DNA from: Isurus oxyrinchus
Taxonomy: Eukaryota
Assembly (NCBI GenBank): GCA_026770705.1
Contig: JANJGN010000031.1
Location: 1,550,001 to 1,614,000 of the forward strand
DNA: 64,000 nt
Reading direction: 5' to 3'
Shown here piece after piece: positions 12,324 to 46,491 of this stretch. Under the pieces are notes generated by a model. It saw only the letters and a list, made by a program, of their open reading frames with translations, did not search any database and was not told where the DNA came from. Positions within the stretch are counted from its first letter, which is position 1; every line of letters begins with the position of its first letter. The translations under genes were made by a program, and so were the position numbers.

Positions 12324-12847
12324 CAGACTCCAGGCGCAGTAATACACGGCCGAGTGATTCCCCCGCAGGCTGGGGGACTCCAGCATGAACTTGGAGCCAC
12401 TCGGTCTCTGGGCCTTGAAACCGTCCACCGGCCCCTCTGAACTCACTTGATTGGTGCCTGCGGAGTAAAACATCAGCTGCGGCTCCCTCCCCGGGTACTG
12501 TCTGTACCAGAACATGTCAGGGTTACTGCTCCCCTCCATAGTGCACTCCAGTTCCACTTCATCCCCGGAATATCTGGAGACAGCAGCGGGAGTCTGGCGG
12601 ATAGTCTGTGAGTTCACATCTGGGGAACAGAAGGAGAGCGGAAGCCGTCAGTAAAGGGGGTTAATTGGGTGTTGGGGAAACAAAGAAAGATAAGAGATAA
12701 ACGTAGAGAAATAGAAAGAAACACCAGAAGGAGAGAGAGCAAGGGAAGGTCAGCAAGTGGAGCGGAAAGCTCGAGGCTGAGCTGGAATTGTTGTCTGGAA
12801 AGTTCCTTACAGTGAAACATGATTAACGGCGGCAGCAACAGATACAT
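12324..12847 (-). CDS. TRBV: TCR beta V segment, type C copy 1, apparently functional (TRBV30-like); leader 12811-12847, V exon 12324-12619
   Basis: Spliced product MYLLLPPLIMFHYVNS-QTIRQTPAAVSRYSGDEVELECTMEGSSNPDMFWYRQ...YYCAWSL. GT/AG sites, open frame, both Cys and the Trp present, consensus RSS. Confidence 0.92.
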
Positions 12848-12924
12848 CTTCCACTTCAGGTTCCCTTTGAACCAATCTTTATCACTGGTAAGAAAACACT
12901 AGAAATAAAATGCTCCTCCTCCTC

Positions 12925-13010
12925 ACTCTGATTGGCAGCCCAACCCCTCCCATTCAGACTAACAGCCCCGCCTTTTCCCGTTTCAGCCCCGCCTCTCTCT
13001 CCCTGATTGG
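12925..13010 (-). promoter_or_regulatory. Putative V promoter: CCAAT boxes and GC boxes upstream of the type C leader
   Basis: gattgg (CCAAT on the minus strand) twice and ccccgcc twice. The same layout occurs upstream of type A (809-880) and a similar one upstream of type B (10229-10270). Confidence 0.45.
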
Positions 13011-13371
13011 ATTATGTGGAGCTGCGGGCAGCAGGAAGGTGCGCACATGGGGGTGTTAGTGGACAGGGCAAAACTCGAGGGGTCACAACTCAGATTCATC
13101 AGGACAATACCGGAGTTTAGAGGGGTAAATTAAGAAGACAGGCTGCAGCAACCTTGCTGCATTCCCTGAATTTAGAATAGTGAGGGGTGACTTAATTCAA
13201 CTGCTCAAACTGGAAAAGCAAAATTGAGGGTATTTGATAGAAACTTTTCTCTCTGCTGGGAGGACTGTCCAAAAGAGTAGAATAACCTTAAAATTAGAGT
13301 TCGGAATGAGAGGTGAGCTTATTGATACATAGAAGATTCGGAGGTTGGCTTGAAAAGGCAGATACTGTTCT

Positions 13372-13513
13372 AGTTCTGTCGAAGGGTCATGAGGACTCGA
13401 AACGTCAACTCTTTTCTTCTCCGCCGATGCTGCCAGACCTGCTGAGTTTTTCCAGGTAATTCTGTCTTTGTTTTGGATTTCCAGCATCCGCAGTTTTCTT
13501 TGTTTTTATTTTT
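13372..13513 (+). mobile_element. 142-bp Penelope-like 3'-terminal mini-insertion containing a hammerhead ribozyme motif
   Basis: Near-identical to the reverse complement of PLE terminus 25345-25480. Perfect 12-bp TSD AGATACTGTTCT (13360-13371 / 13514-13525). The empty site is visible in the type A paralogue (~1254-1265). Confidence 0.88.
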
Positions 13514-14906
13514 AGATACTGTTCTTCATGGGGGAAGAGAGAACTCGGAGCAGTTTCAAAAAAGGGGGTCGCCCGTTTAAGAGGGAGATGAGGAACAATC
13601 TCTTTGAGAGTCGTGAATGTTTGCAATTCTGTACCTCAAAGAGCAGTGGAGGATGGGTCAATGAATATATTCAAGGCTGAGCAAAAGTTTTGAATTATTC
13701 GGGAAATAGGAGATAATGAATGCGGGAAGGCTGCAGACAAAGTGGATAAGGCTGCAATGAGATTTGCCATGATCTCATTGAATGGCAGAGCAGGCTCGTG
13801 GGGCCGAATGGCCTACTCCTGCTCTTCTTTCTTATGTCCTTAAGTTATGACCGGCTAACTTGCTCCTATATCAGTAACTACTTTCGATATTCCCGGGATA
13901 GTTTTCTCTCTGACCAGCCTTGTATTCCCTGGAATGTAGAAGTTCGAAGAGTGAGCAAATCAAGGCGTTAATGATTAAAGGATTTGATAAAGCAGATGGA
14001 GAGAAAGCATTTCCATTGGCTGGGGAAGGGTCCACCACACCGGCGCAGTACAATCAAATTCGACCCAGGCCGGTGGAAATCTTGAGCTCGGTCCCCTGCA
14101 AACAGCTGTGGAGCCTGGGGATCAACTGTAACCTTCAACAGCCGAATTAATCGAAAACAGAAAATGGTGGGAAAACGCAGGTCAGGCAGCATCTGTGGGG
14201 AGAGAAACAGATTTAACGTTTCGAGTCCGTCTAACACTTCCTCAGACCGGAAATGATAGATTTTTGTAATGTTGGGAGAACGAAAATACAGAGCGCAGGC
14301 GGGTAAATGGAGCTAAGAAACAGAGCAGCCACGATTCCATTGAATGAATGAACAGTTTCGCGGTGAGGAATCGCCTCCTCCGCCGACTCGAATGGCCGAA
14401 TGGTCTCCCGATATTCCTGTGTAAAAACTTCATTAAGCTCGATGGGCCTCCTCCTGTTCCTGTCTAATAGTTTCGAGAGGGGGCTGAAATGACCTCCTCC
14501 TTTACGTATGTAACAAATCCAAAGGGACAGAATGGGGACGTGTGTAACAAAACCAAAGGGACTGAACGGGGCTTCCGTATGTTGCCGTGCTGAATGGACG
14601 CCTTCTGTAACTTTGTTTCCTTTAAAACATTGTCCGGCGCTGGTCTCCTTGATGGTCTTTGTCCGTCCCCTGCTGCTCCAAGGAGAACGCGCAGTTAGTG
14701 AATAAATTTCAATTATTTTTGCTGCAGTCACAAACTCCTCATTCTGGTACAATATTGTTAATTAATCTCCAGTGTTTTTACATCCATTCCCTCACTTTCA
14801 TAGTAACCGGTTTCCTCTTATTGCCATAAACACGTTATTCAGCAAACGTGAAACAGGGGGCAACCGCCTGGTTCTCTCATTTACAGCTGTTTCCTGCCGC
14901 CTTTAG

Positions 14907-14945
14907 GGTTGTTGTTGAGCTGCTCCATCTCTCTGAGTCACTGTG
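14907..14945 (-). other. 23-RSS of V type D copy 1
   Basis: CACAGTG-23 nt-ACAACAACC (A-tract of the nonamer broken). Confidence 0.9.
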
Positions 14946-15423
14946 CAGACTCCAGGCGCAGTAATACACGGCCGCGTGATCCACCGGGCGACTCCAACTT
15001 GAACTCCGAGTCTCTCGATCTCCGAGCGGTGAAACCGCCCACCGGCCCCTCTGGATTTACAATATTGGTGCCTCAGGAGTCAAACATCAGCTGCAGCTCT
15101 TTCCCCGGGTCCTGTCTGTACCAGAACATGACACCGCTACTGGCTCCATCCGCAGTGCAATTCAATTCCACTCTCTCTCCAAGAAATTTGGAAATAGTTC
15201 GGGGAATCTGATGGACTGTCGCCGATTTCGCGGCTGAGAAACAAAACGGGAGAGAAGGACGTAAATAAACAGGGACATTCTCATGGAGAAGCAGGGAATG
15301 AAAGAGAAAACATGAGAGAAGGATGGAAGAAAATAAATGATAAACGATGGATGTTGACAAAAATTGTCGCTTGAAAAATCACTTACACTGAATTAAGATC
15401 ATGACACTCAGCAACAGAAACAT
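14946..15423 (-). pseudogene. TRBV: TCR beta V segment, type D copy 1 (pseudogene); leader 15387-15423, V exon 14946-15233
   Basis: Leader MFLLLSVMILIQ is intact. In-frame TGA at 15073-15075 and an 8-nt deletion in FR3 (exon is 288 nt). Confidence 0.9.
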
Positions 15424-16199
15424 CTTTCACTTTAAGTTTGTCTTGTCATTGGGAAAGGAACGAAAACTGGAGAGGCCAGGCTTGATGGGAGTGAAACCGC
15501 CTCCTGTCAAATCAATGAAGGGAAGATGGAGGGCCCAGGGATGTGTGCATATAGCCCTCCCTCCATGGTGGAAAGACACGCCTCTCCCTCAATAATTGGC
15601 TGTAAGTGGAGCTGATAAGAACAGCGGGTTTCAAAGGCCAGAGGGCGCGAGTGGGCAAAGCAGTCGCAGATGCAGTGGGTAAGTCAGAGGTCACAATTAT
15701 CGGCCTAAGCGGGGAGAGCATAATATGTTCTAACTGGCGAGAAGCGAAGAACTCTAGAGCTGCAAAGGAACTTAGTTATCCAGCATGAAAAATCTCAGAT
15801 AGACAGAAAGAAAAATGAGTCACCAAGGTGAATGGAATGCTAGCCTTTACTCAAGCGGAGCTGGAGTGCAGCATGGAGCCAGTTACACTCCAGTTGTTGA
15901 GAGCGTCGGGCGGACTCCATCGCGAGATTTATTTCAGTTCTGGCCAGCTCACCTCAGGAGGGATGTATTAGTCTGAGAGGGGGCGGGGGACAAAGTGGAT
16001 TGACCAGATTAATATTGGGCTCAAAGCGTTAAATCACGTGGACGGTTTCTCTGTATTCCCTTGAGTTTACAAGATTGAGGAATGTATTTGCGAGCTCCTT
16101 TTTGGACATCTTAGAAAGGTATCCCGCGTTAATAAATAGGTGCTATTTCATCTAGTGTTCTTCTAGAACAATGAGATGCAGTATGTTGCTTAGTGCTGG

Positions 16200-16540
16200 T
16201 GTTGGCATCATGGTGTTGTTACTGGTCTCGTATTTCAGAGAGCCACGATTATTCTCTGGGGGCCCGGGTTCAGGTCCCACCACGGCAGGTGGCGAAATTT
16301 GAATCCAATCAAAATCTGAAATTGAAAGTCTGATGACTATGAACCGATTGTCGTAAAAACCCATCTGGTTCCCTTTAGGGAAGAGAATGTGCCGTCCTTA
16401 CCCTGGTCTGGTCTACATGTGACTCCACACCCACACCCGCAGCAATGTGGTTCACTCTGAACGAGGGCAATGAGGGATGGCCAATAAATGCTGGCCTAGC
16501 CAGCGACGCCCACATCCCACGAACGAACCATTAAAAATAA
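16200..16540 (+). mobile_element. tRNA-derived SINE with LINE-like 3' tail
   Basis: B-box-like GGTTCAGGTCC, body (cgtaaaaacccatctggttc..tacatgtgactcca), tail gggatggccaataaatgctggcctagccagcgacgcccacatccc, A-rich end. Confidence 0.65.
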
Positions 16541-17500
16541 AGCCTAGGCCTTATGAGAGGCGTGCGGTAAGGAAGAACTGATTAAACAACGGATAGTGAA
16601 AACCTGCAACATTCTCCCCAAAATACAGTCAATGTTGGTGGTCAATTTCAAAATTGAGGTTGATAGATTTTGTCCGGTCAGTGTTTCAAGGGATGAGTAG
16701 TGGAGGTGGGTAGATGGAATGAACGGTACAGATCAGCTATAATGCTATAGTGGAACAGGCTCGAAGGGCTGTCTCGCCTCCATCTGTTTCTGTTCCAATT
16801 TCACCATGTTCCAGGCACTGATGTGTTTCATGGTCCTAGAGCGTCCTCTGCAGTTCGAGTTGGGAAAGAAATCGCAGAGTCAGTGTATTAAAGCCCAGCT
16901 TTTTCGGTGCTTCCTTAACGCTGTTTCCCTTCCATTTTGTAATTTATCTTTTATTTTTATTTGCTTTTTAATTTGCCGCACTCACAGCTAAATTCACAGT
17001 GAAAACCAGCCTCGTCCGCTGACTGTGCTCAAAACTTCAGCCCAGAGTGGGTTATTCATTTATTCACTTATTCATTTCTCATTCGTGTTTATCCAGTTTC
17101 CGCTTCAGGGCATCGATAATATTCCCCTCAAACACTCGGTGGTGGCGACTTCCACATGCTTTGCTTGAATTAGATTGTTCCAAATTCCTAATTCGATTTT
17201 GTAACTGATTCTCATCTTCTCCACCTGAATCCTATTGAACCGCTTCATTGTTTCAATAAAACTTCATGAGAATTGCTCTCAACCTCCATTTTCCAGCAAA
17301 AACAAACAAATTTAGACTTTGCTGATGGTTTCACCACTCATAGCTGGCAACTCCCTGCTCCAGTGCTTCACAATCTATTCACTCATTTTATTGTAACTGT
17401 TCTCTTATTGTCAAAAGGTCTTTGTCCCGAGAGAAAAAGAAACAGCGAGTCGAAGCGCCTCGTAATGTTGTCTCGAGCAGCTGTTTCCTGCCGCCTTTGG

Positions 17501-17539
17501 GGTTTTTGTTGAGCTGCTCCATCTCTCTGAGTCACTGTG
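17501..17539 (-). other. 23-RSS of V type E copy 1 (consensus)
   Basis: CACAGTG-23 nt-ACAAAAACC. Confidence 0.95.
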
Positions 17540-18042
17540 CAGACTCCAGGCGCAGTAATACACGGCCGAGTGATTCGCCCGCAGGCTGGGGGACTCCAGC
17601 ATGAACTTGGAGTCACTCGGTCTCTGGGCCTTGAAACCGTCCACCGGCCCCTCTGAATTCACCTGATTGGTACCTGTGGAGTAAAACATCAGCTGCGGCT
17701 CCCTCCCCGGGTACTGTCTGTACCAGAACATGTAAAGGTTACTGCTCCCCTCCATAGTGCACTCCAGTTCCACTTCATCCCCGGGAAATCTGGAGACGGC
17801 AGCGGGAGTCTGGCGGATAGTCTGTGAGTTCACATCTGGGGAAGAGAATGGAAGGAGGAGGTCAGTAAGTGGAGACAATGGCAGAGATTGGGGGAAAAAG
17901 GACAAAAAGAAAAGAAAAATAGCAAAAGACAGAAAGAAAGAGATAGAAATAAAAATATAAAAGAAGGTTATGAATGAGAGTTACTATTTAAAAGAATTCA
18001 CTTACGGTGAAACAAGGTCATCAGACCCAGCAACAGATACAT
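17540..18042 (-). CDS. TRBV: TCR beta V segment, type E copy 1, apparently functional (TRBV30-like); leader 18006-18042, V exon 17540-17835
   Basis: MYLLLGLMTLFHHVNS-QTIRQ...CTMEGSSNLYMFWYRQ...YYCAWSL. Open frame, GT/AG sites, consensus RSS. Confidence 0.92.
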
Positions 18043-19321
18043 TTTTAACTTGAAGTCTTTTACTCAATAAACACAGGAGCGAGAACAGAAGTGTGGACGC
18101 TTGTGAGGTGCCAACCCGCTCTTATCAAAACATCGAGGAAAACACGAAGAGCGGGAGGAAGTGATGAAGATTCGGACACACCTCTCCCTCTGAATGGCCT
18201 TTCTGCGACTCCCTCTCGAAGTTGCTGGGCCCTCCCTCTCTCTGATGTATTGACTCCCCGTACAGCCTGTTAACGTTTAAAGAGAAACTGAACTCCCAGT
18301 GAAAACAGTACGATACAAGATTTTAGGTTTTGAATAAGAAAAGCTTTACTGTACAAAACTTGTAAAAGCGAGCACTACTAAATTAACATAATATTTTGTA
18401 ATGACTCTGTTTAAAACCCATTTTACTTTCTACTTCCACTCAAGAATTTCTTTATACATTTCAAGGTCTGGAGGTTTCATTCACTTCTTCTGAGACAAAG
18501 CAAGGTACATCACAGTTCTCGGTAATTCACTCGGTAATTGTCCTCAATGATCCAGCTATTCTCTGATGTGCAAGTGCTTTTGGGATCCTTCCACCAGCAT
18601 TTGTATAGGTGACTCCAACCCTCCTTTGACACCTCCCGATTGTGGATCCCCACAGCTCAAGCATGGGCTTCACCATCTTGCGTAATTACTTTTAAAATCA
18701 GAAAATCACCTTTCATTTCTGACAGCCCTTTGTTATGGTTCTCATTGCTTCACAGCTCCTGGCAGACCTTCTCTCTGCTTTTCTTCAAGCTGAGTGACTG
18801 TTTCTGTGAGAAAACATATAGATAAAAACCCAAAACAAAAGTTTACCTTCCTGCATTGCATATCTCCATGGATGTTCCTAACAGAAATGTAAATTATCAA
18901 AACAACCCTTCGATTCTGGGTCTCACACAAATAATTTACATCTCTAATGAGAATAACAACCATCTTACCAGATTCTCAGGTTCCATGAAGAAACTCATTG
19001 TTTATAAAATAGTTTAAGAGCTTCTTAAATCTAGAGAGCCTACATGAATTATTTAAACCTCCTCAGTTTACACTCCAACTTTTACGCATTTTCTAAGATG
19101 TTGTGAGACAAACGGGCTGCTATACAGAGATCCAGATGTGCTGTTATAGAATGCTAGGTGTAAATATCTTTCACCACTATCCCAAAATCAAACTTTCCTC
19201 TTTGAACTGTAATGAAGAGGTGAACTGTCGAGTATTTCTTTATTTGTGAATTGATAGGGTAGATAGTTTACAGTTCTCTCCTCTGTGGGGAAATTCAGAA
19301 CAACTTTACAATAAAATCAAC

Positions 19322-20740
19322 ACACATACGAATTAGGAGCAGGAGTAGGCCACTCGGCCCCTCTAGCCTGCTCCGCCATTCAATAAAACCATGGCTGATC
19401 TAATTTTCACCTCAACTTCAAATTCCTGCCTACTCCTGCTAACCTTTCACCTCCTTAATATCAAGAATCTCTCTACTTCCGCCTTAATGATATTCAAAGA
19501 CTCTCCCTCAAACACCTTTTGCAGAAGAGAATTCCAAACCCTCACAACACTCTGAGAGAGAGAAAAATATCCTCACCACTGCCTGAAACAGGCAATGCCT
19601 AATTTTTAAACAGTGCCCCTTAGTTCGAGATTCTCCCACAAGAAGAAACATCCTCTCCACATCCACCTTGTCAAGACCCCTCAGGAACTTATATGTTTCA
19701 ATCAAGTCGCCTCTTCCCTTCTAAACTCCAGTGGATACAAGCCTAGTCCAACCTTTCCTTATAAGACAACCCGACCATTCCAGTATTAATCTAGGAAAAC
19801 TTCTCTGAACCGCTTCCAATGCATTTCCATCCTTCCTTAAATACTGCACACAGTACTGAGATGTGGTCTCACCAATGCCCTAAATAACTGAAGCATAACT
19901 TCCCTATCCTTGTATTCAACTCCCATCACAAAAACAATAACATTCTCTTAGCTTTCCCAATTACTTGCTGTACCTGCATTCTAACCTTTTGGGATTCAAG
20001 CACTTGGGCACCCAGAAATCTCTACATCTCAGAGCTCTGCAATCTCTCACCATTTATATAATATGCTTCTTTTTATGTCCTGCCAAAATGGGCAACTTCA
20101 CATTTTCTCACATTAATACTGTATTTGCCAGGTCTTTACCCACTCATTTAACTCATCTATATCCGTTTGTAACCTTCTTATGTCCTCTTCACAATTTACT
20201 TACCTACCTATCTTTGGATCAACTGCAAATTTAACAACAATATCGTCATTCCCTTCATGTTAATTATTTGTATAAATTGTGAAGTGTTGAGGCCCCAGCA
20301 TTGACACCTGTAGCACATCACTCGCCACATCCCAGCAACCAGAAAAAGACATATTTATGCCTACTCTCTGTTTCCTGTTAGCTAGTCAATCTGCTATCCA
20401 TGCCAATATGTAATGTCAAATACCACGTGCTCTTATTGTCAGTAATAATCTTTGATGTGGCACTTTATCAAATGCTTTCTGGAACTCTAAATGTAGTACA
20501 TCCACCAGTTCGCCTTTATTAACAGTACCTTTTCCTGTTTCAAAGAACTCCAATGAATTGGTTAAATATCATTTCCCTTTCTCAAAACCATGTTGACTCT
20601 GCCTGATGACCTTGAATTTACCTAAGTGTCCTGTTATAGCATCTTTGAGAACCACTTATGCCATTTTCCCTTTGACAGGTGTAAAGCTCACTGCCCTATA
20701 GATTCCTGCTCTCTGTCTCCCTTCCTTTTCAATAAAGCAG
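19322..20740 (-). mobile_element. CR1 LINE, 5'-truncated and degenerate
   Basis: RT C-terminus IETYKFLRGLDKVDVERMF..GESRTKGH.LKIR; 3' UTR ggagcaggagtaggcc..gcctgctccgccattcaat. Confidence 0.75.
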
Positions 20741-21229
20741 TTATATCAGGTTTTTTTGCAATCAGAACTAGGCTGTTGAGTTATGATATCAAGAAGCATT
20801 TATTCACACAAACAAATCTGTAACACTTGCCCCAATGATCACTGGATGACTTGGAGGGTCATTTGAAGATTTAAGACCGAAATTGATAGTTTTTTGTTGG
20901 GTAAATGTATGAATGGTGACAAGGCAGATAATTGAAATTAAGATACAGAACAGCTGGAATCTAATTGAATTGTCTGGCAGGTACGAAAGACTCCCGATTT
21001 TTCTTGAGTTCTCTACTTGAGGGCAGGTCCGACCCACAGCCTCCACCACAGGTGGGGCTAGGAAGCAGGCCACGAATTCACCCTATCCAGAATGGGGATC
21101 AAACCCCGTCGCTGTTAGCACCAAACTGATCCACACTAGCCATCCAGCTACTTCAACATGTATGTTGGAGCCTGGAATCTCCGACATTCCAAAACATTGC
21201 TAACCAGGAATATCTCCCGCTCCCACTGC

Positions 21230-21385
21230 CTGCCATTTGCGTGTGTTGGAAGGACTTCTACGTTGACACTCAACCTGTTTGGCTGCATTACGAATGTACC
21301 TTCCACGGGCATCGAGCCCTATAGTGGGGGATGAAGATAGAGCTTCTGACTCAGAGGCAGGGTCACTACTCGCTGCGCCACAAGA
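21230..21385 (-). mobile_element. tRNA-derived SINE 5' fragment
   Basis: Minus strand TGTGGCGCAGCGAGTAGTGACCCTGCCTCTGAGTCAGAAG, a tRNA-like head. Confidence 0.45.
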
Positions 21386-25530: not shown

Positions 25531-25569
<39 letters not shown>

Positions 25570-36217: not shown

Positions 36218-36596
36218 CCGGGATCTGCAACTGTCCTAATTCTGGTCTCTGGAATATTCTCAATTTGAATTTCACTCTTATTGGCAGCGATCAACCACCA
36301 AGTAATGGGTTTCCTTCACTACATCTCTTCGCCTCTCTATCTCTCTCCTACTTTAAGGTACTCCTGAAAACCTACCTCTTAGATCAACCTTTTGGCCATC
36401 TACTCTAATATATTCTTACCCCGCTCGGTGTCAAAGCAGGTTTTATAATACCCAGGAGAAGTGTCTTGGGCTAGTTCACTACATTAAGGATGCCATCTAA
36501 ATATAACTTTTTCTCCTTGTTGGCATTAAGGTTATAACAGCGTGAATTCACTAAACTGAAACCGGCGGTTAGAGGCTAAATTATGGGGATGGATTC

Positions 36597-37252
36597 TTTT
36601 TAATTTCTTCTCGTGATGTGAACGTGGCAAGACCAAAATTAATTCCGGAGCCTTGAAAAATCATGGTGAGCCACCTCGTTCAATGGCTGCAGCGAATGAT
36701 GTGTGGGTACATCCCCGGTTAGGGAGGGTGTCCTAATGTTTACACCCAGCAACAGCGAAAGAAGACTTAAGTATTTCCCATTCCGAATAGTGTGTGATTT
36801 GGAGGGGTATTTGCAGGTGGTGGTGTTCCCATGTCTCTGCTGACCCTCTCTCAGGTATAAATGTTGCAGTTTTGGATCACATTGCAAAAGAAACCTTGGC
36901 GAATTCTTGCAGTGCATCTTGTAGATGGTACACACTGTGCTACTCAGCATCGGTAGTGCATGGAGTGAATGTTTCTGGATGTGGTGCCATCAAGCGGACT
37001 GCTTTGTCCTGGATAGTGTTTATCTTCGAGTGTTATGGGAGCTGCACTCATCCAGGCAAGTGGAGAGTCTTCCATCACACTCCTGACTTGTGCCATGTAG
37101 ACAGTGGACAAGTCTTGGGGAGTCACGAAGTGATTTACTTTCCACAGAAAACCCAGCCTCTGACTTGCCCTTTCAGCCCATTAGTTACGTTTCTGGTCAA
37201 TGATAATCCCTAGGATGTCGAGGATGGTGCATTCAGCGAAGGCAATGCCATT
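36597..37252 (-). mobile_element. CR1/L2-group LINE 3' fragment, copy 2
   Basis: Duplicate of 8140-8795. Confidence 0.65.
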
Positions 37253-38001
37253 GGGAGTTGTTGGAGTTACATAGACTTGGTCTCTATTCCCTTGAGTATA
37301 ATACATTTAGTGGTTAGTTAATTGAGCATTAGAAAAATGTTAAAATGGGTTTATATATTTGAGAAAAGGAAACAGTTCCCTGTGGTAGCTGAATCCAGAC
37401 AAGATGGCAAAGTATTGAAATTCAGGCTAGGTATATTCAGATGTCCTGTTCTATTCCTTCGCATGACCAATGTGCTTATTGGAGTTAAGGGTGAAATTGA
37501 GCTTTCAAGAGAAACATATGGAACAAAGACAGTTAGATACAGTTAAAACATATTTGAACCATGGTCTAATTGAATGGCTCTACTGTTTCTGTGTAAAAGG
37601 CTCGAGAGACGTTTAAACGGCCTCTTCCTGCAGCTATATAACCGGTCTGTTTAGGGGCAATTGACCTCCTCCTGCTGAAAAGTCGAATGAGCTAAATGGG
37701 ATTCCGTTGTGCCACTTCAAACAATTTCAGTCGTCTGTTTCGTGGCCCTAGAGAGTCCTCTACTGTATTTGTGGAGAAATGCAACACAGCTTCAGTATAT
37801 CGATTGAGAACAAATTCACTCCTCTCTATCGTTCTTCCTTTGTTTATTACATTCTCTCTTTCCTTCCTTTCTTTCGATATTCCCGATGTACCTTTTGTCT
37901 CTTCTTCTTGTCAAAAACACATTCATTCTGCAAAATGAAATCAAGTTTTTTTGGGGACAGCGCATGATTTCCTCACTCACAGTTGTTTCCTGCCGCCTTT
38001 G

Positions 38002-38040
38002 GGCTTTTGTTGAGCTGCTCCATTTCTGTGAGTCACTGTG
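38002..38040 (-). other. 23-RSS of V type B copy 2
   Basis: CACAGTG-23 nt-ACAAAAGCC. Confidence 0.92.
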
Positions 38041-38544
38041 AAGACTCCAGGCGCAGTAATACACGGCCGAGTGATCCGCCTGCAGGTTGGGGGTCTCCAG
38101 TTTGAATTCAGGGTCACTCGGTCTCCGGGCAGTGAAACCGTCCACCGGGTCCCTCGGAACTAACTTGGTTGATAGCAGCTGAGTAAAACATTATTTGGGG
38201 CTCTCTCCCCGGGTATTGTCTGTACCAGTTAATAGCAGGGTTAGTGCTGCCCTCCACATCGCAATTCAGTTCCACTGCCTGCCCGGGAAATTTGGAGACA
38301 GCGGCGGGAGTCTGGCGGATCGTCTGCGAGTTCACGTCTGGAGAAGAGGCAGGAAGAGGAGGAGGTCAGAACCGGAGAAATTCTGGAGATGGAGAAGGAA
38401 AGTGGGAAAGAAAGGAAGGAAGGAAGGGGGGAGGAGAGGAATAATGAAGGAAAGGAAATATAAAGGATTGTTGTTTAAACGGTTATTGCATAAAAAACAT
38501 CACTTACATTGAAATAAGATCAGCAATCTCAAAACCACGTACAT
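38041..38544 (-). pseudogene. TRBV: TCR beta V segment, type B copy 2 (pseudogene); leader 38508-38544, V exon 38041-38337
   Basis: Same +1 frameshift as copy 1. Confidence 0.9.
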
Positions 38545-40731
38545 GTTGACCGGTAAAATTTTCCTATAATAGGGAAATGAGCTGAACCAAGGGCGTTGGG
38601 CATTGTTGGGAACCGACCTGCTTGTTTAAAATCATTGATGAAAACATGAAGAGCTTAAGGAAGTGATTTAGGTGTAAAAAGCCAAGCCCCGCCCCCTCCG
38701 ATTGAAAGCCCCGCCCTTATTATTGGGTGGAACAGGACGTTTCAAAGCGGACAGAGTGGGAAAAGAAGCGGCAGATGCATTTTGATGTGACCCATTCTCA
38801 GGACATCCAGGGTCGACCTAAGAAAGAGGGAGCAGGATACTTTCTAACTGGCGGAAGCGAAGGACTCTGGAGCTGCAAAGGAATTTAGTTGTCTCGCTGA
38901 ACAAGGAAGAATCATACAGTCCAATCGAATTTTTACTTGAAGGGAACTAGAATGCGAGACGGAGGAAGTTCTGGCTCATTGTAAGGAACTCAGAACAAAC
39001 CCCTCCGACAATCCTTCTTTCCATTCGGGGCAGTCACATCAGGAAGGATGAATTGGACCTGGAGGGTGTTCAACGCTGATGCAACAGAATTATACCTTGG
39101 TTTAAGGGGTTAAATCATGAGGACAGGTTGCATAATCTTGTCTGCCTGACCTTCAGCATGAAAGACCCACGGGAACATTTGAGGTTCTTTCATGAGTTTC
39201 AGAAGCAGTTATCACAGGCTATAGCTACCTTGTTTTCTAGATTCCCACACCAGGAAAAATAGTATAACTTCACAGTTAGAGACATGTCTTTCAGGGTGAT
39301 GTGAGGAAATATTTCCTCTGACAAATGGTTGTAGAAATCTGGAACTGTCTCCCAGCAAAAGATTAATGGTGGGTGGGGGGCGTTAACCTTACATTTCAAA
39401 ACTGAGATTGATGGACTTTTTGGGGGACAGTGTGCTGAGAAATATGGACTGGAGGTGGACAGTTGGAGGTAAAATGTAGTCCTGACGCGGTCATGGTAAC
39501 CATTAACATTAACACTCCCTTTGTCCTTTAGCTCATGACATCTTTGTCAATCTCTCGTTTGCCTCCACCTATCGCTGGCTTTGTATCCAGATCGACCTGC
39601 CCACCCCCCTTAAACAGTATAAATTTCAACACATTTCCACTTCTCTTCAACTCTGAATAAGGGTCATACGGACTCAAAGCGTTAACTCCTTCTCTCTCCA
39701 CAGATGCTGCTAGGCCTGCTGTGTTCTTTCAACATTTTCTGGGTTTTTGTTTTCAGATTTCTGGCATCTGCACTATTTTGCTTTTATTTTAGTCATTTCC
39801 CTCGCGCTTTCTCTCTCTCTCTTTTTTCTGTTGTTCTTCCTTCTCTAACCTTCCCTCTCCCTTTCTATCCTTATTTCCCTCTTTCCTTTCTTTTTTTCAC
39901 ATTACTTAGTTGAATCTATTTATTTCTCCCTCATGTATTTGTTTAGTTTCTCCTCAAGCACATCCCTGCTGCAACCACATTCTCACCACCCACTGGATTT
40001 ATTTCTCCTGGATTCCCAGTTAATTGTATTACTGATGACGTCTTCTAATTGTTTTGATCTTCCTAGAAAGTGGAGACATGTTTGCGTTATCTTTCCTATC
40101 AAACAACTTTCACAATTTCAAATACCTCTATCATGAAAATATCTCAATCTTCTTGCTCGAATAGAAATGCATATTCCAATTCTTTGCTTTTAACTATAGT
40201 CTCTCAGTTCTGGTAACCTCCTCCTTAATTTTCCTTTTCACTTTCTACAGTCCTTCACAATATAATCAGTCACTTTCATTGTAGTCTTTTCTCTTATTGT
40301 CAAAAACCATATTAGCTCTGCAAGAAGAACAAAACACAACAGGTCCAGCCACCGCGCAGTGTTACCATTCGCAGCTGTTTCCTGCCGCCTTTGCATGAAT
40401 TAGTTTGTTCCAAACTCCTGATTCGTTTTTGTAACTTATTCTCATCTTCCCCACCTCAATTCTAATAAATCCCTTCATCATTTCAATAAAACTTCTTGAC
40501 AACTGCTCTCAACCTCTATTTTCCAACAAAAACGAACAAATTCAGAATATGCTGATGCTTGACCCACTCATATCTGGGAACTCTCTTCTCCAGTGCTTCC
40601 CAAACTAATCACTCACTTTTATTCTCGCTGTTCTCTTATTGTCAAAAGGTCTTTGCCCCGAGAGAAAAAGAAACAGGGAGTCGAAGCGCCCGGTAATGTT
40701 GTCTCGAGCAGCTGTTTCCTGCCGCCTTTGG

Positions 40732-40770
40732 GGTTTTTGTTGAGCTGCTCCATCTCTCTGAGTCACTGTG
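40732..40770 (-). other. 23-RSS of V type C copy 2 (consensus)
   Basis: CACAGTG-23 nt-ACAAAAACC. Confidence 0.95.
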
Positions 40771-41294
40771 AAGACTCCAGGCGCAGTAATACACGGCCGA
40801 GTGATTCCCCCGCAGGCTGGGGGACTCCAGCATGAACTTGGAGCCACTCGGTCTCTGGGCCTTGAAACCGTCCACCCGCCCCTCTGAACTCACGTGATTG
40901 GTGCTTGTGGAGTAAAACATCAGCTGCGGCTCCCTCCCCGGGTACTGTCTGTACCAGAACATGTAAGGGTTACTGCTCGCCTCTACAGTGCACTCCAGTT
41001 CCACTTTATCCCCGGAATATCTGGAGACGGCAGCGGGAGTCTGGCGGATAGTCTGTGAGTTCACATCTGGGGAACAGAAGGAGAGCGGAAGCCGTCAGTA
41101 AAGGGGGTTAATTGGGTGTTGGGGAAACAAAGAAAGATAAGAGATAAACGTAGAGAAATAGAAAGAAACACCAGAAGGAGAGAGAGCAAGGGAAGGTCAG
41201 CAAGTGGAGCGGAAAGCTCGAGGCTGAGCTGGAATTGTTGTCTGGAAAGTTCCTTACAGTGAAACATGATTAACGGCGGCAGCAACAGATACAT
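40771..41294 (-). CDS. TRBV: TCR beta V segment, type C copy 2, apparently functional; leader 41258-41294, V exon 40771-41066
   Basis: Open frame ...DKVELECTVEASSNPYMFWYRQ...FYSTSTNHVSSEGRVDG...YYCAWSL; GT/AG sites; consensus RSS. Confidence 0.92.
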
Positions 41295-41818
41295 CTTCCA
41301 CTTCAGGTTCCCTTTGAACCAATCTTTATCACTGGTAAGAAAACACTAGAAATAAAATGCTCCTCCTCCTCACTCTGATTGGCAGCCCAACCCCTCCCAT
41401 TCAGACTAACAGCCCCGCCTTTTCCCGTTTCAGCCCCGCCTCTCTCTCCCTGATTGGATTATGTGGAGCTGCGGGCAGCAGGAAGGTGCGCACATGGGGG
41501 TGTTAGTGGACAGGGCAAAACTCGAGGGGTCACAACTCAGATTCATCAGGACAATACCGGAGTTTAGAGGGGTAAATTAAGAAGACAGGCTGCAGCAACC
41601 TTGCTGCATTCCCTGAATTTAGAATAGTGAGGGGTGACTTAATTCAACTGCTCAAACTGGAAAAGCAAAATTGAGGGTATTTGATAGAAACTTTTCTCTC
41701 TGCTGGGAGGACTGTCCAAAAGAGTAGAATAACCTTAAAATTAGAGTTCGGAATGAGAAGTGAGCTTATTGATACATAGAAGATTCGGAGGTTGGCTTGA
41801 AAAGGCAGATACTGTTCT

Positions 41819-41960
41819 AGTTCTGTCGAAGGGTCATGAGGACTCGAAACGTCAACTCTTTTCTTCTCCGCCGATGCTGCCAGACCTGCTGAGTTTTTCC
41901 AGGTAATTCTGTCTTTGTTTTGGATTTCCAGCATCCGCAGTTTTCTTTGTTTTTATTTTT
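41819..41960 (+). mobile_element. 142-bp PLE-terminal hammerhead mini-insertion, copy 2
   Basis: TSD AGATACTGTTCT at 41807-41818 / 41961-41972. Confidence 0.88.
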
Positions 41961-43353
41961 AGATACTGTTCTTCATGGGGGAAGAGAGAACTCGGAGCAG
42001 TTTCAAAAAAGGGGGTCGCCCGTTTAAGAGGGAGATGAGGAACAATCTCTTTGAGAGTCGTGAATGTTTGCAATTCTGTACCTCAAAGAGCAGTGGAGGA
42101 TGGGTCAATGAATATATTCAAGGCTGAGCAAAAGTTTTGAATTATTCGGGAAATAGGAGATAATGAATGCGGGAAGGCTGCAGACAAAGTGGATAAGGCT
42201 GCAATGAGATTTGCCATGATCTCATTGAATGGCAGAGCAGGCTCGTGGGGCCGAATGGCCTACTCCTGCTTTTCTTTCTTATGTCCTTAAGTTATGACCG
42301 GCTAACTTGCTCCTATATCAGTAACTACTTTCGATATTCCCGGGATAGTTTTCACTCTGACCAGCCTTGTATTCCCTGGAATGTAGAAGTTCGAAGAGTG
42401 AGCAAATCAAGGCGTTAATGATTAAAGGATTTGATAAAGCAGATGGAGAGAAAGCATTTCCATTGGCTGGGGAAGGGTCCACCACACCGGCGCAGTACAA
42501 TCAAATTCGACCCAGGCCGGTGGAAATCTTGAGCTCGGTCCCCTGCAAACAGCTGTGGAGCCTGGGGATCAACTGTAACCTTCAACAGCCGAATTAATCG
42601 AAAACAGAAAATGGTGGGAAAACGCAGGTCAGGCAGCATCTGTGGGGAGAGAAACAGATTTAACGTTTCGAGTCCGTCTAACACTTCCTCAGACCGGAAA
42701 TGATAGATTTTTGTAATGTTGGGAGAACGAAAATACAGAGCGCAGGCGGGTAAATGGAGCTAAGAAACAGAGCAGCCACGATTCCATTGAATGAATGAAC
42801 AGTTTCGCGGTGAGGAATCGCCTCCTCCGCCGACTCGAATGGCCGAATGGTCTCCCGATATTCCTGTGTAAAAACTTCATTAAGCTCGATGGGCCTCCTC
42901 CTGTTCCTGTCTAATAGTTTCGAGAGGGGGCTGAAATGACCTCCTCCTTTACGTATGTAACAAATCCAAAGGGACAGAATGGGGACGTATGTAACAAAAC
43001 CAAAGGGACAGAATGGGGCTTCCGTATGTTGCCGTGCTGAATGGACGCCTTCTGTAACTTTGTTTCCTTTAAAACATTGTCCGGCGCTGGTCTCCTTGAT
43101 GGTCTTTGTCCGTCCCCTGCTGCTCCAAGGAGAACGCGCACTTAGTGAATAAATTTCAATTATTTTTGCTGCAGTCACAAACTCCTAATTCTGGTACAAT
43201 ATTGTTAATTAAACTCCAGTGTTTTTACATCCATTCCCTCACTTTCATAGTAACCGGTTTCCTCTTATTGCCATAAACACGTTATTCAGCAAACGTGAAA
43301 CTGGGGGCAACCGCCTGGTTCTCTCATTTACAGCTGTTTCCTGCCGCCTTTAG

Positions 43354-43392
43354 GGTTGTTGTTGAGCTGCTCCATCTCTCTGAGTCACTGTG
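43354..43392 (-). other. 23-RSS of V type D copy 2
   Basis: CACAGTG-23 nt-ACAACAACC. Confidence 0.9.
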
Positions 43393-43870
43393 CAGACTCC
43401 AGGCGCAGTAATACACGGCCGCGTGATCCACCGGGCGACTCCAACTTGAACTCCGAGTCTCTCGATCTCCGAGCGGTGAAACCGCCCACCGGCCCCTCTG
43501 GATTTACAATATTGGTGCCTCAGGAGTCAAACATCAGCTGCAGCTCTTTCCCCGGGTCCTGTCTGTACCAGAACATGACACCGCTACTGGCTCCATCCGC
43601 AGTGCAATTCAATTCCACTCTCTCTCCAAGAAATTTGGAAATAGTTCGGGGAATCTGATGGACTGTCGCCGATTTCGCGGCTGAGAAACAAAACGGGAGA
43701 GAAGGACGTAAATAAACAGGGACATTCTCATGGAGAAGCAGGGAATGAAAGAGAAAACATGAGAGAAGGATGGAAGAAAAGAAATGATAAACGATGGATG
43801 TTGACAAACATTGTCGCTTGAAAAATCACTTACACTGAATTAAGATCATGACACTCAGCAACAGAAACAT
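43393..43870 (-). pseudogene. TRBV: TCR beta V segment, type D copy 2 (pseudogene); leader 43834-43870, V exon 43393-43680
   Basis: Same TGA (43520-43522) and 8-nt deletion as copy 1. Confidence 0.9.
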
Positions 43871-44648
43871 CTTTCACTTTAAGTTTGTCTTGTCATTGGG
43901 AAAGGAACGAAAACTGGAGAGGCCAGGCTTGATGGGAGTGAAACCGCCTCCTGTCAAATCAATGAAGGGAAGATGGAGGGCCCAGGGATGTGTGCATATA
44001 GCCCTCCCTCCATGGTGGAAAGACACGCCCTCTCCCTCAATAATTGGCTGTAAGTGGAGCTGATAAGAACAGCAGGTTTCAAAGGCCAGAGGGCGCGAGT
44101 GGGCAAAGCAGTCGCAGATGCAGTGGGTAATGTCAGAGGTCACAATTATCGGCCTAAGCGGGGAGAGCATAATATGTTCTAACTGGCGAGAAGCGAAGAA
44201 CTCTAGAGCTGCAAAGGAACTTAGTTATCCAGCATGAAAAATCTCAGATAGACAGAAAGAAAAATGAGTCACCAAGGTGAATGGAATGCTAGCCTTTACT
44301 CAAGCGGAGCTGGAGTGCAGCATGGAGCCAGTTACACTCCAGTTGTTGAGAGCGTCGGGCGGACTCCATCGCGAGATTTATTTCAGTTCTGGCCAGCTCA
44401 CCTCAGGAGGGATGTATTAGTCTGAGAGGGGGCGGGGGACAAAGTGGATTGACCAGATTAATATTGGGCTCAAAGCGTTAAATCACGTGGACGGTTTCTC
44501 TGTACTCCCTTGAGTTTACAAGATTGAGGAATGTATTTGCGAGCTCCTTTTTGGACATCTTAGAAAGGTATCCCGCGTTAATAAATAGGTGCTATTTCAT
44601 CTAGTGTTCTTCTAGAACAATGAGGTGCAGTATGTTGCTTAGTGCTGG

Positions 44649-44989
44649 TGTTGGCATCATGGTGTTGTTACTGGTCTCGTATTTCAGAGAGCCACGATTA
44701 TTCTCTGGGGGCCCGGGTTCAGGTCCCACCACGGCAGGTGGCGAAATTTGAATCCAATCAAAATCTGAAATTGAAAGTCTGATGACTATGAACCGATTGT
44801 CGTAAAAACCCATCTGGTTCCCTTTAGGGAAGAGAATGTGCCGTCCTTACCCTGGTCTGGTCTACATGTGACTCCACACCCACACCCGCAGCAATGTGGT
44901 TCACTCTGAACGAGGGTAATGAGGGATGGCCAATAAATGCTGGCCTAGCCAGCGACGCCCACATCCCACGAACGAACCATTAAAAATAA
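44649..44989 (+). mobile_element. tRNA-derived SINE, copy 2
   Basis: Duplicate of 16200-16540. Confidence 0.65.
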
Positions 44990-45949
44990 AGCCTAGGCCT
45001 TATTAGAGGCGTGCGGTAAGGAAGAACTGATTAAACAACGGATAGTGAAAACCTGCAACATTCTCCCCAAAATACAGTCAATGTTGGTGGTCAATTTCAA
45101 AATTGAGGTTGATAGATTTTGTTCGGTCAGTGTTTCAAGGGATGAGTAGTGGAGGTAGGTAGATGGAATGAACGGTACAGATCAGCTATAATGCTATAGT
45201 GGAACAGGCTCGAAGGGCTGTCTCGCCTCCATCTGTTTCTGTTCCAATTTCACCATGTTCCAGGCACTGATGTGTTTCATGGTCCTAGAGCGTCCTCTGC
45301 AGTTCGAGTTGGGAAAGAAATCGCAGAGTCAGTGTATTAAAGCCCAGCCTTTTCGGTGCTTCCTTAACGCTGTTTCCCTTCCCTTTTGTAATTTATCTTT
45401 TATTTTTATTTGCTATTTAATTTGCCGCACTCACAGCTAAATTCACAGTGAAAACCAGCCTCGTCCGCTGACTGTGCTCAAAACTTCAGCCCAGAGTGGG
45501 TTATTCATTTATTCACTTATTCATTTCTCATTCGTGTTTATCCAGTTTCCGCTTCAGGGCATCGATAATATTCCCCTCAAACACTCGGTGGTGGCGACTT
45601 CCACATGCTTTGCTTGAATTAGATTGTTCCAAATTCCTAATTCGATTTTGTAACTGATTCTCATCTTCTCCACCTGAATCCTACTGAACCGCTTCATCGT
45701 TTCAATAAAACTTCATGAGAATTGCTCTCAACCTCCATTTTCCAGCAAAAACAAACAAATTTAGACTTTGCTGATGGTTTCACCACTCATAGCTGGCAAC
45801 TCCCTGCTCCAGTGCTTCACAATCTATTCATTCATTTTATTGTAACTGTTCTCTTATTGTCAAAAGGTCTTTGTCCCGAGAGAAAAAGAAACAGCGAGTC
45901 GAAGCGCCTCGTAATGTTGTCTCGAGCAGCTGTTTCCTGCCGCCTTTGG

Positions 45950-45988
45950 GGTTTTTGTTGAGCTGCTCCATCTCTCTGAGTCACTGTG
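45950..45988 (-). other. 23-RSS of V type E copy 2 (consensus)
   Basis: CACAGTG-23 nt-ACAAAAACC. Confidence 0.95.
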
Positions 45989-46491
45989 CAGACTCCAGGC
46001 GCAGTAATACACGGCCGAGTGATTCCCCCGCAGGCTGGGGGACTCCAGCATGAACTTGGAGTCACTCGGTCTCTGGGCCTTGAAACCGTCCACCGGCCCC
46101 TCTGAATTCACCTGATTGGTGCCTCTGGAGTAAAACATCAGCTGCGGCTCCCTCCCCGGGTACTGTCTGTACCAGAACATGTCAGGGTTATTGCTCCCCT
46201 CCATAGTGCACTCCAGTTCCACTTCATCCCCGCGAAATCTGGAGACGGCAGCGGGAGTCTGGCGGATAGTCTGTGAGTTCACATCTGGGGAAGAGAATGG
46301 AAGGAGGAGGTCAGTAAGTGGAGACAATGGCAGAGATTGGGGGAAAAAGGACAAAAAGAAAAGAAAAATAGCAAAAGACAGAAAGAAAGAGATAGAAATA
46401 AAAATATAAAAGAAGGTTATGAATGAGAGTTACTATTTAAAAGAATTCACTTACGGTGAAACAAGGTCATCAGACCCAGCAACAGATACAT
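45989..46491 (-). CDS. TRBV: TCR beta V segment, type E copy 2, apparently functional; leader 46455-46491, V exon 45989-46284
   Basis: Open frame ...CTMEGSNNPDMFWYRQ...FYSRGTNQV...YYCAWSL; GT/AG sites; consensus RSS. Confidence 0.92.

What the first reader, a model, noticed from the sequence alone, without database searches (positions are those of the whole stretch)
12324..46284. Duplicate copies differ almost only in CDR1/CDR2 of the intact V genes, while pseudogene V exons are identical
Counted by eye: C1 vs C2 has 11 nt differences in 296 nt, giving 8 amino-acid changes (E>K, M>V, G>A, D>Y, A>T, G>S, Q>H, P>R). E1 vs E2 has 7 differences giving 6 changes (P>R, S>N, L>P, Y>D, T>R, A>G). Most fall in or next to CDR1/CDR2. 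Their leaders and introns appear identical between copies, and I see no differences in the V exons of A1/A2/A3, B1/B2 or D1/D2 in the same duplication units. Inference: rapid germline diversification of the loops that contact MHC in mammalian TCRs, by positive selection and/or short conversion tracts, with pseudogenes as a built-in neutral control.
Basis: partly seen in the sequence, partly recalled or inferred. Interest (0 to 1): 0.8.

Follow-up and report, generated by a model that had tools for sequence, protein, structure and literature searches.

The report
Shark TCR duplicates differ in loops
Two recently duplicated pairs of working shark T-cell-receptor beta V genes differ mainly in their two inherited binding loops; the pattern is real and statistically strong, is of a kind long known for antibody-type genes, and its cause (selection or copying from related genes) cannot be settled from this window.

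Summary
The counts hold. The window carries a tandem 22.6-kb unit twice (2710-25344 and 31144-53792), with 212 substitutions in 22,595 aligned bases (0.94%). All V genes lie on the minus strand. C1/C2 differ at 11 of 296 exon bases (8 residues) and E1/E2 at 7 of 296 (6 residues). The V exons of A, B and D show 0 of 881. Leaders and introns are identical.

Ten of the 18 differences fall in the 36 CDR1/CDR2 bases (P=1.2e-5). CDR replacement divergence is 16% against 0.88% in the rest of the unit (P=1.7e-9).

- dN/dS has no power (1.17 overall, not significant).
- The C excess also covers framework and 3' flank.
- Dense patches of change also occur in non-coding DNA: 9 found, 1.4 expected, 6 outside the exons.
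- Identical blocks cover 36% of the unit, so the pseudogenes are not a clean neutral control.

Sixteen of 21 odd alleles have no donor in the window. An RNA-type contig from another sample matches C1 exactly and is spliced. The C2, E1 and E2 alleles could not be checked in reads.

Best reading (0.5): CDR changes were retained after duplication, with some conversion. The scan noted similar loop-swapped TRBV duplicates elsewhere in this genome.

The parts
2710..25344 (.). Tandem unit 1 (22.6 kb), holding V genes B1, C1, D1, E1 and A2
   Evidence: 98.7% identical to 31144-53792, with 212 substitutions in 22,595 aligned bases.
31144..53792 (.). Tandem unit 2, holding B2, C2, D2, E2 and A3
1..2718 (.). 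Tail of a preceding unit (unit 0) with pseudogene A1. Together with the head of unit 1, positions 1-6368 are closest to 51083-57459.
   Evidence: 98.86% over 6,388 columns; three-copy site patterns.
53784..57459 (.). Truncated head of a further unit (unit 3)
25342..31144 (.). 5.8-kb insert between units 1 and 2, made of two 3.35-kb tandem copies. It is not part of the V genes.
   Evidence: 25342-27796 matches 28692-31144 at 99.5%.
12324..12619 (-). C1 V exon (exon 2), intact, 98 codons read from 12617. CDR1 is 12516-12533 and CDR2 is 12447-12464.
   Evidence: Pfam V-set E=3.4e-11. An exact contig from another sample covers 12488-12619.
12811..12847 (-). C1 leader exon (37 nt, GT donor at 12810); the intron is 12620-12810
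   Evidence: In one search, run X20 has depth 5.12 at 12830-12842 and at 12619, but 0 at 12630 and at 12722-12783.
12285..12323 (-). C1 recombination signal: heptamer CACAGTG, 23-nt spacer, nonamer ACAAAAACC
   Evidence: read directly from the sequence.
40771..41066 (-). C2 V exon, intact; 11 differences from C1
17540..17835 (-). E1 V exon, intact. CDR1 is 17732-17749 and CDR2 is 17663-17680. The leader is 18006-18042 and the RSS is 17501-17539.
45989..46284 (-). E2 V exon, intact; 7 differences from E1
22674..22969 (-). A2 V exon (pseudogene). The exon's reading frame is open, but the leader has a 1-nt deletion that leads to a stop, and the acceptor AG is changed to AT. Identical copies are A1 at 42-337 and A3 at 51124-51419.
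9584..9880 (-). B1 V exon (pseudogene, 1-nt insertion causing a frameshift). The identical copy B2 is at 38041-38337.
14946..15233 (-). D1 V exon (pseudogene, with a stop codon and an 8-nt deletion). The identical copy D2 is at 43393-43680.
12230..12582 (-). Island of 14 C1/C2 differences in 353 nt. On the leader and intron side it is followed by a 729-nt identical block. On the other side there are 162 identical nt, then one difference, then 438 identical nt.

Best explanation
A cluster of T-cell-receptor beta-type V gene segments was duplicated in tandem recently; neutral divergence is about 0.9%. In the two V genes that still work (C and E), changes that alter the two germline-encoded binding loops, CDR1 and CDR2, were retained far more often than neutral change elsewhere. 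The four copies now offer four different CDR1/CDR2 pairs on one framework. The changes probably arose as point or small clustered mutations. A minority were copied from sister V genes. Large parts of the unit, including introns and pseudogene exons, have stayed identical or were made identical again. Shown here: the duplication, the counts, the loop focus, the rate excess, the intact gene anatomy, and a spliced transcript of C1. Inferred: that selection for loop diversity caused the retention, and that these loops dock on MHC as they do in mammals.
For: Replacement divergence in the CDRs is 9 per 56.5 sites (16%) against 0.88% in the rest of the unit (P=1.7e-9). Framework pN is 1.4% and pS is 2.2%, close to background. 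Ten of the 18 differences lie in 36 of 296 bases (P=1.2e-5). Three of the 9 dense patches of the unit lie in the two intact exons, which make up 2.6% of the unit (P=1.3e-3). For 16 of 21 sites in or just behind the exons, the odd allele has only chance-length matches (8-12 nt) anywhere else in the window, so most are not copies of a V gene seen here. The CDR changes are single bases rather than replaced blocks. The CDR1 string is identical in C1 and in the older paralogue A (0 of 18 bases, with 38 of 296 exon differences), yet it is altered in C2, E1 and E2. CpG transitions account for 2 of 18 differences, against 34 of 212 unit-wide. All four genes keep the two cysteines, the core tryptophan, the leader, the splice sites and a consensus 23-RSS. 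A contig of an RNA-type run from another sample matches C1 exactly over 12488-12619, covers the leader and skips the intron. Passages of Ott et al. 2018 (PMC5931798) say shark TCR gamma, delta and alpha hypermutate but 'apparently not' beta. That would leave germline change as the route to beta CDR1/2 diversity.
Against: The replacement-to-silent ratio does not differ from neutral (9:1 in the CDRs, Fisher P=0.68; 1.17 for the whole exon). Silent sites in the exons also look raised (3.5 per 129; P=0.03 to 0.11). C carries extra changes in framework and in 3' non-coding DNA (9 in 317 nt, P=0.002). Six dense patches lie in non-coding DNA, also with no donor in the window, so a patch-making process acts without any selection on loops. 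The loop density of 5 in 36 is not significantly above the density of non-coding patches (P=0.07). Codon 34 shows the same D/Y change in C and in E, in opposite units. C itself is an older chimera, with an A-like leader and intron and an E-like exon. Conversion therefore does occur in this array. There are only two gene pairs. The alleles of C2, E1 and E2 were not seen in reads, because the table was cut off. Further C/E copies very probably lie just outside the window.
Confidence: 0.5

Rival explanations
1. Gene conversion from C/E-family donors outside the window. Short to medium tracts copied from sister V genes carry older loop variants into the young duplicates. Such donors share the framework and differ mainly in loops, so the loop focus and the apparent rate excess reflect the age of the donors' variation, not faster change since the duplication.
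For: There is an island of 14 differences in 353 nt in C, reaching into non-coding 3' flank and set between long identical blocks. Over the CDR1-CDR2 stretch 12415-12597, C1 is nearer to E2 (6 mismatches in a 184-column match) than to C2 (10 in 183). Codon 34 is shared crosswise between C2 and E1. Five sites have possible donors in the window, with matches to A genes of 19-36 nt and to B of 47 nt. C is a chimera of A-like and E-like parts. Unit 0 extends beyond the start of the window. Earlier notes on another piece of this genome read similar TRBV pairs as block exchange (unchecked).
Against: Sixteen of 21 odd alleles have no donor among the 11 V genes of the window. The changes are isolated single bases, 9 of 10 in the CDRs being replacements, rather than blocks with mixed silent changes. 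Both C1 and C2 carry derived states, so one tract does not suffice. Conversion only moves variation; how the loop-biased variants arose still needs explaining.
Confidence: 0.3
2. Neutral patchy mutation plus relaxed constraint. Clustered mutation events hit the array at random. In working genes, framework hits are purged and loop hits are tolerated, so the loop pattern arises without positive selection, and its coincidence with both intact exons is chance.
For: Nine patches of 5 or more substitutions within 90 nt were found, against 1.4 expected, and 6 are in non-coding DNA. Close pairs of substitutions are in excess outside the exons too (14 against 7.4 within 5 nt). The replacement-to-silent ratio equals the neutral expectation.
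Against: Three of 9 patches fall in 2.6% of the sequence (P=1.3e-3), and none falls in the three pseudogene exons. C keeps 6 non-CDR exon changes, 3.5 of them replacements, so purging of framework hits is not evident there.
Confidence: 0.1
3. Assembly or polishing artefact, or somatic variants. Reads from the four 96-97% alike exons were mixed during assembly, or DNA from lymphoid tissue contributed mutated copies.
For: Four near-identical exons lie in a tandem array that is hard to assemble. The alleles of C2, E1 and E2 were not seen in the read tables. One X1 contig carries a base at 15447 that neither unit has.
Against: The window has no N runs. A contig from a different study and sample matches C1 exactly over 132 nt, including six C1/C2 sites. 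An X1 contig carries 6 of the 7 unit-2 alleles between 14542 and 14855. Mixing of reads cannot create alleles that are absent from every copy. Unrearranged V segments are not known targets of hypermutation, and a consensus would not take up rare somatic variants (established knowledge).
Confidence: 0.06
4. A targeted germline mutator: an AID-like deaminase or error-prone repair acting on active V genes in germ cells and preferring the loops.
For: The rate excess is limited to intact genes. Changes within the loops are clustered, for example 12537/12539 and 17734/17736. The abstract of PMC2193156 (listing) reports rearrangement of immunoglobulin genes in shark germ cells.
Against: Only 4 of 18 sites touch a WRC/GYW hotspot in either allele, while 36 of 296 exon positions are such hotspots. 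Transitions and transversions are 9 to 9, close to the background of 119 to 93. Pseudogene A shares C's promoter, leader and intron type (about 90% alike) yet has 0 changes.
Confidence: 0.04

Closest known systems
Positive (diversifying) selection on CDRs of germline immunoglobulin V genes (Tanaka and Nei 1989; recalled, not read here)
   Same: Related germline V genes differ mostly by replacement changes in CDR1/CDR2 while the frameworks stay alike.
   Different: This case involves a T-cell-receptor beta-type V family in a shark and very young duplicates (0.9% neutral divergence). The evidence is a rate excess over non-coding DNA, not a significant dN above dS.
Homology-unit duplication and birth-and-death evolution of TRB V clusters (bovine TRB locus, PMC2685407; passages read)
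   Same: Multi-gene units that mix working V genes and pseudogenes are duplicated in tandem. The copies then diverge or decay. [quoted passage not shown]
   Different: The passages I read do not describe a loop-focused contrast between intact and dead genes of the same young unit. Here long identical blocks also point to homogenisation between units.
Germline block exchange between TRBV paralogues noted by this scan elsewhere in the same genome (s1-866041, s1-866045; AI notes, unchecked)
   Same: Neighbouring TRBV duplicates have near-identical frameworks and flanks and differing loops.
   Different: Those notes describe old, very different loop blocks in mixed combinations. Here the loops differ by one to three single bases, and 16 of 21 odd alleles have no donor in the window.
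Somatic hypermutation of shark TCR V regions (Ott et al. 2018, PMC5931798; abstract and passages read)
   Same: Replacement changes are concentrated in CDRs of shark TCR V regions.
   Different: That process is somatic, tied to AID hotspots, and reported for alpha, gamma and delta but 'apparently not' beta. Here the differences are in germline-configuration genes with RSS attached and show no hotspot bias. Such near-identical germline copies could be mistaken for hypermutation in cDNA studies.

Membership tests
TCR beta variable gene segment (TRBV) | V-set Ig domain with the first cysteine, the core tryptophan and the second cysteine | tested here: met
   Pfam V-set matches all 4 of 4 intact exons, E=2.5e-12 to 3.4e-11. 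C25, W37 and C94 of the exon translation are present in all four.
TCR beta variable gene segment (TRBV) | Split leader: a short leader exon, an intron, then the V exon | tested here: met
   Both genes have a 37-nt leader with a GT donor and an AG acceptor; the introns are 191 nt (C1) and 170 nt (E1). The X20 contig covers the leader and the V exon but not the intron.
TCR beta variable gene segment (TRBV) | Recombination signal with a 23-nt spacer directly 3' of the V exon | tested here: met
   CACAGTG, 23 nt, ACAAAAACC at C1 and E1. The signal is identical in C2 and E2.
TCR beta variable gene segment (TRBV) | Closest relatives are beta chains rather than other V types | tested here: met
   The best single-domain PDB matches are TCR beta chains (5xov_J 2.4e-23, 3hg1_E 3.9e-23). 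Engineered multi-domain antibody and TCR constructs rank above or among them. The nearest database protein is an unnamed bamboo-shark V domain at 61% identity.
TCR beta variable gene segment (TRBV) | Lies in a TRB locus upstream of D-J-C beta | not tested
   No D, J or C gene was looked for in the window. Only earlier AI notes place a TRB locus 0.3-0.4 Mb before the window.
Positive selection on germline CDRs | Replacement rate exceeds silent rate within the CDRs | tested here: inconclusive
   9 replacements per 56.5 sites against 1 silent per 15.5 sites; ratio 2.5, Fisher P=0.68.
Positive selection on germline CDRs | CDR replacement rate exceeds an independent neutral rate | tested here: met
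   16% against 0.88% in the rest of the same duplication, P=1.7e-9. The neutral rate is patchy.
Positive selection on germline CDRs | Frameworks under purifying selection | tested here: inconclusive
   Framework pN/pS is 0.62 from 5.5 replacement and 2.5 silent changes, Fisher P=0.69.
Interlocus gene conversion among V segments | A donor carrying the converted tract | tested here: not met
   For 16 of 21 sites the odd allele matches nothing else in the window beyond 8-12 nt. Five sites have possible donors. Donors outside the window could not be searched.
Interlocus gene conversion among V segments | Site patterns that conflict with the duplication tree | tested here: met
   At codon 34, C1 = E2 (GAC) and C2 = E1 (TAC), against 4 sites that separate C from E. 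The chance of the same site and the same base is about 0.09. An older event is also visible: the C exon is 97% like E while its intron is like A.

The most novel reading that the evidence does not exclude
After long stasis, the inherited docking loops of working TCR beta V genes changed in a burst right after duplication. CDR1 is identical between C1 and the older paralogue A across 12.8% exon divergence, yet in three of four copies the loops changed at about 18 times the neutral rate, while dead genes in the same unit did not change at all. This would be either adaptive germline tuning of beta-chain loops in a lineage whose beta chain is reported not to hypermutate, or a germline process that targets active V exons.
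Probability: 0.12. Interest if true: 0.7.

Novelty: new member of a known kind. Interest (0 to 1): 0.4.

Why it matters
It gives a dated, internally controlled example of how a germline V repertoire gains new loop combinations soon after a duplication, in the oldest vertebrate lineage with T-cell receptors. It also has a practical use. These working V genes are 96-98% alike and differ by a few loop bases, so in shark repertoire studies that lack a complete germline catalogue they could be mistaken for somatic hypermutation. The unit-wide mosaic of identical blocks and dense patches shows that pseudogenes in such arrays cannot be taken as neutral clocks without checking.

Tried and rejected
AID-type hotspots: only 4 of 18 sites touch WRC/GYW in either allele, and 36 of 296 exon positions are such hotspots. 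Rejected as the cause.

CpG decay: 2 of the 18 differences are CpG transitions, against 34 of 212 unit-wide. Rejected.

Donors in the window: longest-exact-match scans and BLAST of the patches found none for most alleles.

More family copies from protein databases: the search with the C2 exon returned 4 proteins at E<=1e-10 among 6 candidates. Two were bamboo shark and two sturgeon; none came from a close relative. The 140-aa mechanical ORFs fall within that search's length range, so I did not spend a second search.

Reads: all listed runs are kept as contigs. The single read-laying run was swamped by interspersed repeats at 13352-14500 and 16232-16615, and its table of other letters was cut (202 rows not shown). 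The 18 sites could therefore not be read directly for X1 or for the sister species. Only the listed pieces were usable.

Structure: AlphaFold2 on a 7-row alignment gave a weak model (mean pLDDT 58.7). Its strand pattern puts residues 25-34, 53-56 and 62-67 in loops, which agrees with my CDR limits, but I give it little weight.

Relative-rate test of C1 against C2 with E as outgroup: 2 against 7 changes, P=0.18. Not significant.

Papers: five searches listed no paper on germline TRBV duplicates in sharks. I read passages only of PMC2685407, 10.1101/2024.09.05.611428, PMC5931798, PMC2191167 and PMC4289303. No supplements were opened. Tanaka and Nei 1989, and the mammalian view that CDR1/2 contact MHC, are recalled or taken from the introductions of those papers.

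Full report
STRUCTURE OF THE WINDOW. The window has no N runs. Self-BLAST shows a 22.6-kb unit present twice in full: 2710-25344 and 31144-53792, 98.67% identical over 22,690 columns. The tail of an earlier unit lies at 1-2718 and the truncated head of a later one at 53784-57459. A 5.8-kb insert at 25342-31144 is itself two 3.35-kb tandem copies. A MAFFT alignment of the two full units has 212 substitutions and 94 gap columns in 22,689 columns, that is 0.94% over 22,595 aligned bases.

Where three copies exist, the junction segments 1-6368 and 51083-57459 are the closest pair. The segments flanking the insert are the odd ones: 23 of 37 variable sites in the tail and 26 of 55 in the head. This suggests a higher-order repeat of about 51 kb and further copies to the left of the window.

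THE GENES. All V genes lie on the minus strand. C and E are intact:
- a 37-nt leader exon with a GT donor;
- an intron of 191 nt (C1) or 170 nt (E1) ending in AG;
- a 296-nt V exon;
- a consensus signal of CACAGTG, 23 nt and ACAAAAACC.

The exon translations match Pfam V-set in 4 of 4 cases. Their best single-domain matches among solved structures are TCR beta chains. The nearest database protein is an unnamed bamboo-shark V domain at 61% identity. That fits the earlier AI notes, which call this genome a lamnid shark and place a TRB locus nearby (not verified by me beyond this).

A, B and D are pseudogenes. A has a 1-nt deletion and a stop in the leader, and its acceptor AG is changed to AT. 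B has a 1-nt insertion. D has a stop and an 8-nt deletion. I searched exon 2 alone and never joined it to the leader.

THE OBSERVATION. C1/C2 differ at 11 of 296 exon bases, changing 8 residues. E1/E2 differ at 7 of 296, changing 6 residues. The leader, intron and about 90 nt upstream show 0 differences for C. E shows 2, both about 60 nt before the ATG. The V exons of A (three copies), B and D show 0 differences in 881 nt of the unit 1 to unit 2 comparison.

IS IT MORE THAN CHANCE? Outside the two exons the units differ at 194 of 22,003 bases (0.88%). Against that rate:

| Comparison | Result | P |
|---|---|---|
| C exon | 11 of 296 | 8e-5 |
| E exon | 7 of 296 | 0.017 |
| C and E together | 18 of 592 | 8e-6 |

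Among 22,300 sliding 296-nt windows, 1.35% reach 11 or more differences; these are only the C region and one G-run region at 23273-23858. A further 5.2% reach 7 or more.

I set CDR1 as exon residues 29-34 and CDR2 as 52-57, counted from the conserved cysteines and tryptophan. These limits agree with the alignment to a solved mouse beta chain and, weakly, with the loops of a low-confidence model (pLDDT 58.7). Ten of the 18 nucleotide differences fall in these 36 bases (P=1.2e-5), and 9 of 14 residue changes fall in 12 of 98 codons (P=7e-6). Replacement divergence in the CDRs is 9 per 56.5 sites (16%), 18 times the background (P=1.7e-9). Frameworks show pN 1.4% and pS 2.2%. The loop focus is solid.

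WHAT WEAKENS A SIMPLE SELECTION STORY.
- The replacement-to-silent contrast has no power. Pooled pN/pS is 1.17 overall and 2.5 in the CDRs (9 to 1, Fisher P=0.68). Silent sites in the exons look raised themselves (P=0.03 to 0.11).
- The excess in C is not confined to the loops. Fourteen differences lie in 12230-12582, nine of them outside the CDRs (P=0.002) and three behind the RSS. In E the non-CDR rate (2 of 260) equals the background.
- Divergence between the units is a mosaic. Eighteen difference-free blocks of 300 nt or more (7.9 expected) cover 36% of the unit. They include 729 nt over C's leader and intron and the blocks that hold the pseudogene exons. There are also nine patches of 5 or more substitutions within 90 nt (1.4 expected). 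Six of these are in non-coding DNA, with no donor in the window.
- It follows that the pseudogene exons, at 0 of 881 (P=4e-4 against background), are not a neutral clock. They sit in blocks that stayed identical or were made identical again.
- Even so, three of the nine patches lie in the two intact exons, which make up 2.6% of the unit (P=1.3e-3).

CONVERSION OR NEW MUTATION? Exchange does occur in this array. The C exon is 96-97% like E, while C's leader and intron are about 90% like A. Only 4 exon sites separate C from E. Codon 34 is GAC in C1 and E2 but TAC in C2 and E1. Over the CDR1-CDR2 stretch, C1 is nearer to E2 than to C2.

However, for 16 of 21 sites the odd allele matches nothing else in the window beyond 8-12 nt. 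Possible donors exist for five sites only: 12582, 12518/17734, 12324, 17676 with 17672, and 17577. The loop changes are single bases. CDR1 is identical in C1 and in all A copies (0 of 18, against 38 of 296 exon differences) but is changed in C2 (two bases), E1 (two) and E2 (one). Hotspot bias (4 of 18) and CpG decay (2 of 18) do not explain them. Donors outside the window remain possible and untested.

READ SUPPORT. All runs that hold the stretch are kept as contigs. There is one sample of the same species, twelve samples of a sister species that holds about 28% of the sampled words, and small RNA-type runs of the same species.

The usable pieces were these:
- A 174-nt contig of run X20 (another study and sample) matches C1 with 0 other letters over 12488-12619 and stops at the exon edge. 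The run's depth of 5.12 reappears at 12830-12842 in the leader but is 0 at 12630 and at 12722-12783 in the intron. This shows a spliced leader-to-V transcript carrying the C1 alleles at six of the C1/C2 sites.
- A contig of X1 carries 6 of the 7 unit-2 alleles between 14542 and 14855.
- A sister-species contig over 12418-12548 has 10 other letters in 131 nt, against 2-3% in four non-coding pieces. This is suggestive only, since it may come from a paralogue.
- The alleles of C2, E1 and E2 remain unverified.

VERDICT. The most likely account (0.5) is retention of loop-changing mutations in the two working V genes after a recent tandem duplication, with a minority of sites exchanged between sister genes, set in a unit whose other parts were kept or made identical. 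Conversion from unseen family members (0.3) is the main rival. Neutral patches with relaxed loops (0.1), artefact (0.06) and a targeted germline mutator (0.04) follow.

The kind of pattern is long known for antibody-type V genes (recalled). Conversion and unit duplication of TRBV genes are documented in mammals (PMC2685407, passages). The scan's own notes describe similar loop-swapped TRBV pairs elsewhere in this genome. My five paper searches listed no report of it for shark TRB genes. I rate it a new member of a known kind, of moderate interest. It also carries a practical warning for studies of shark TCR hypermutation (PMC5931798, passages).

Noticed in passing
12285-12323 and 17501-17539; proteins P0001, P0002: The whole 23-nt RSS spacer appears deeply conserved. 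Read through as protein, the signal gives HSDSERWSSSTKTPK in this window and the same string in a bamboo-shark V protein (P0002); P0001 differs at 2 residues. The heptamer/spacer junction contains TGACTCA, as another first-reader note says (s1-863624).
   Followed up: partly
12620-12900 versus 22970-23248 and 17836-18116: Gene C is a chimera. Its upstream region, leader and intron are about 90% like pseudogene A, while its V exon and RSS are 96-97% like gene E, whose intron is unrelated. This marks an older exon-scale exchange.
   Followed up: partly
4810-4881, 6559-6629, 21398-21486, 22598-22653, 23306-23392, 23557-23629: Six non-coding patches each hold 5-10 substitutions within 90 nt between the units, with no donor in the window. 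At 4810-4881 unit 1 alone differs from two identical copies. The patch at 23557-23575 is 9 changes in a G-run.
   Followed up: partly
1-6368 versus 51083-57459: The closest pair of copies (98.86%) spans a unit junction at an offset of 51,082 nt. This suggests a higher-order repeat of two units plus the 5.8-kb insert, and more V copies left of the window.
   Followed up: no
22598-22653: Pseudogene A2 alone carries 5 changes within 56 nt, in and just behind its RSS (spacer, nonamer and flank), while A1 and A3 agree with each other where both are present.
   Followed up: no
15447 and 15035-15289: A contig of the source-species run X1 has A at 15447, where both units have C; the sister species also has A. 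An RNA-type contig of X20 lies on the D1 pseudogene region with 6 other letters in 255. Either may come from a further copy of the unit.
   Followed up: no
13352-14500 and 16232-16615: Contig depth is extremely high in all four runs and both species, with loose ends rich in A runs. These are interspersed repeats (SINE/LINE-like) inside the unit.
   Followed up: no
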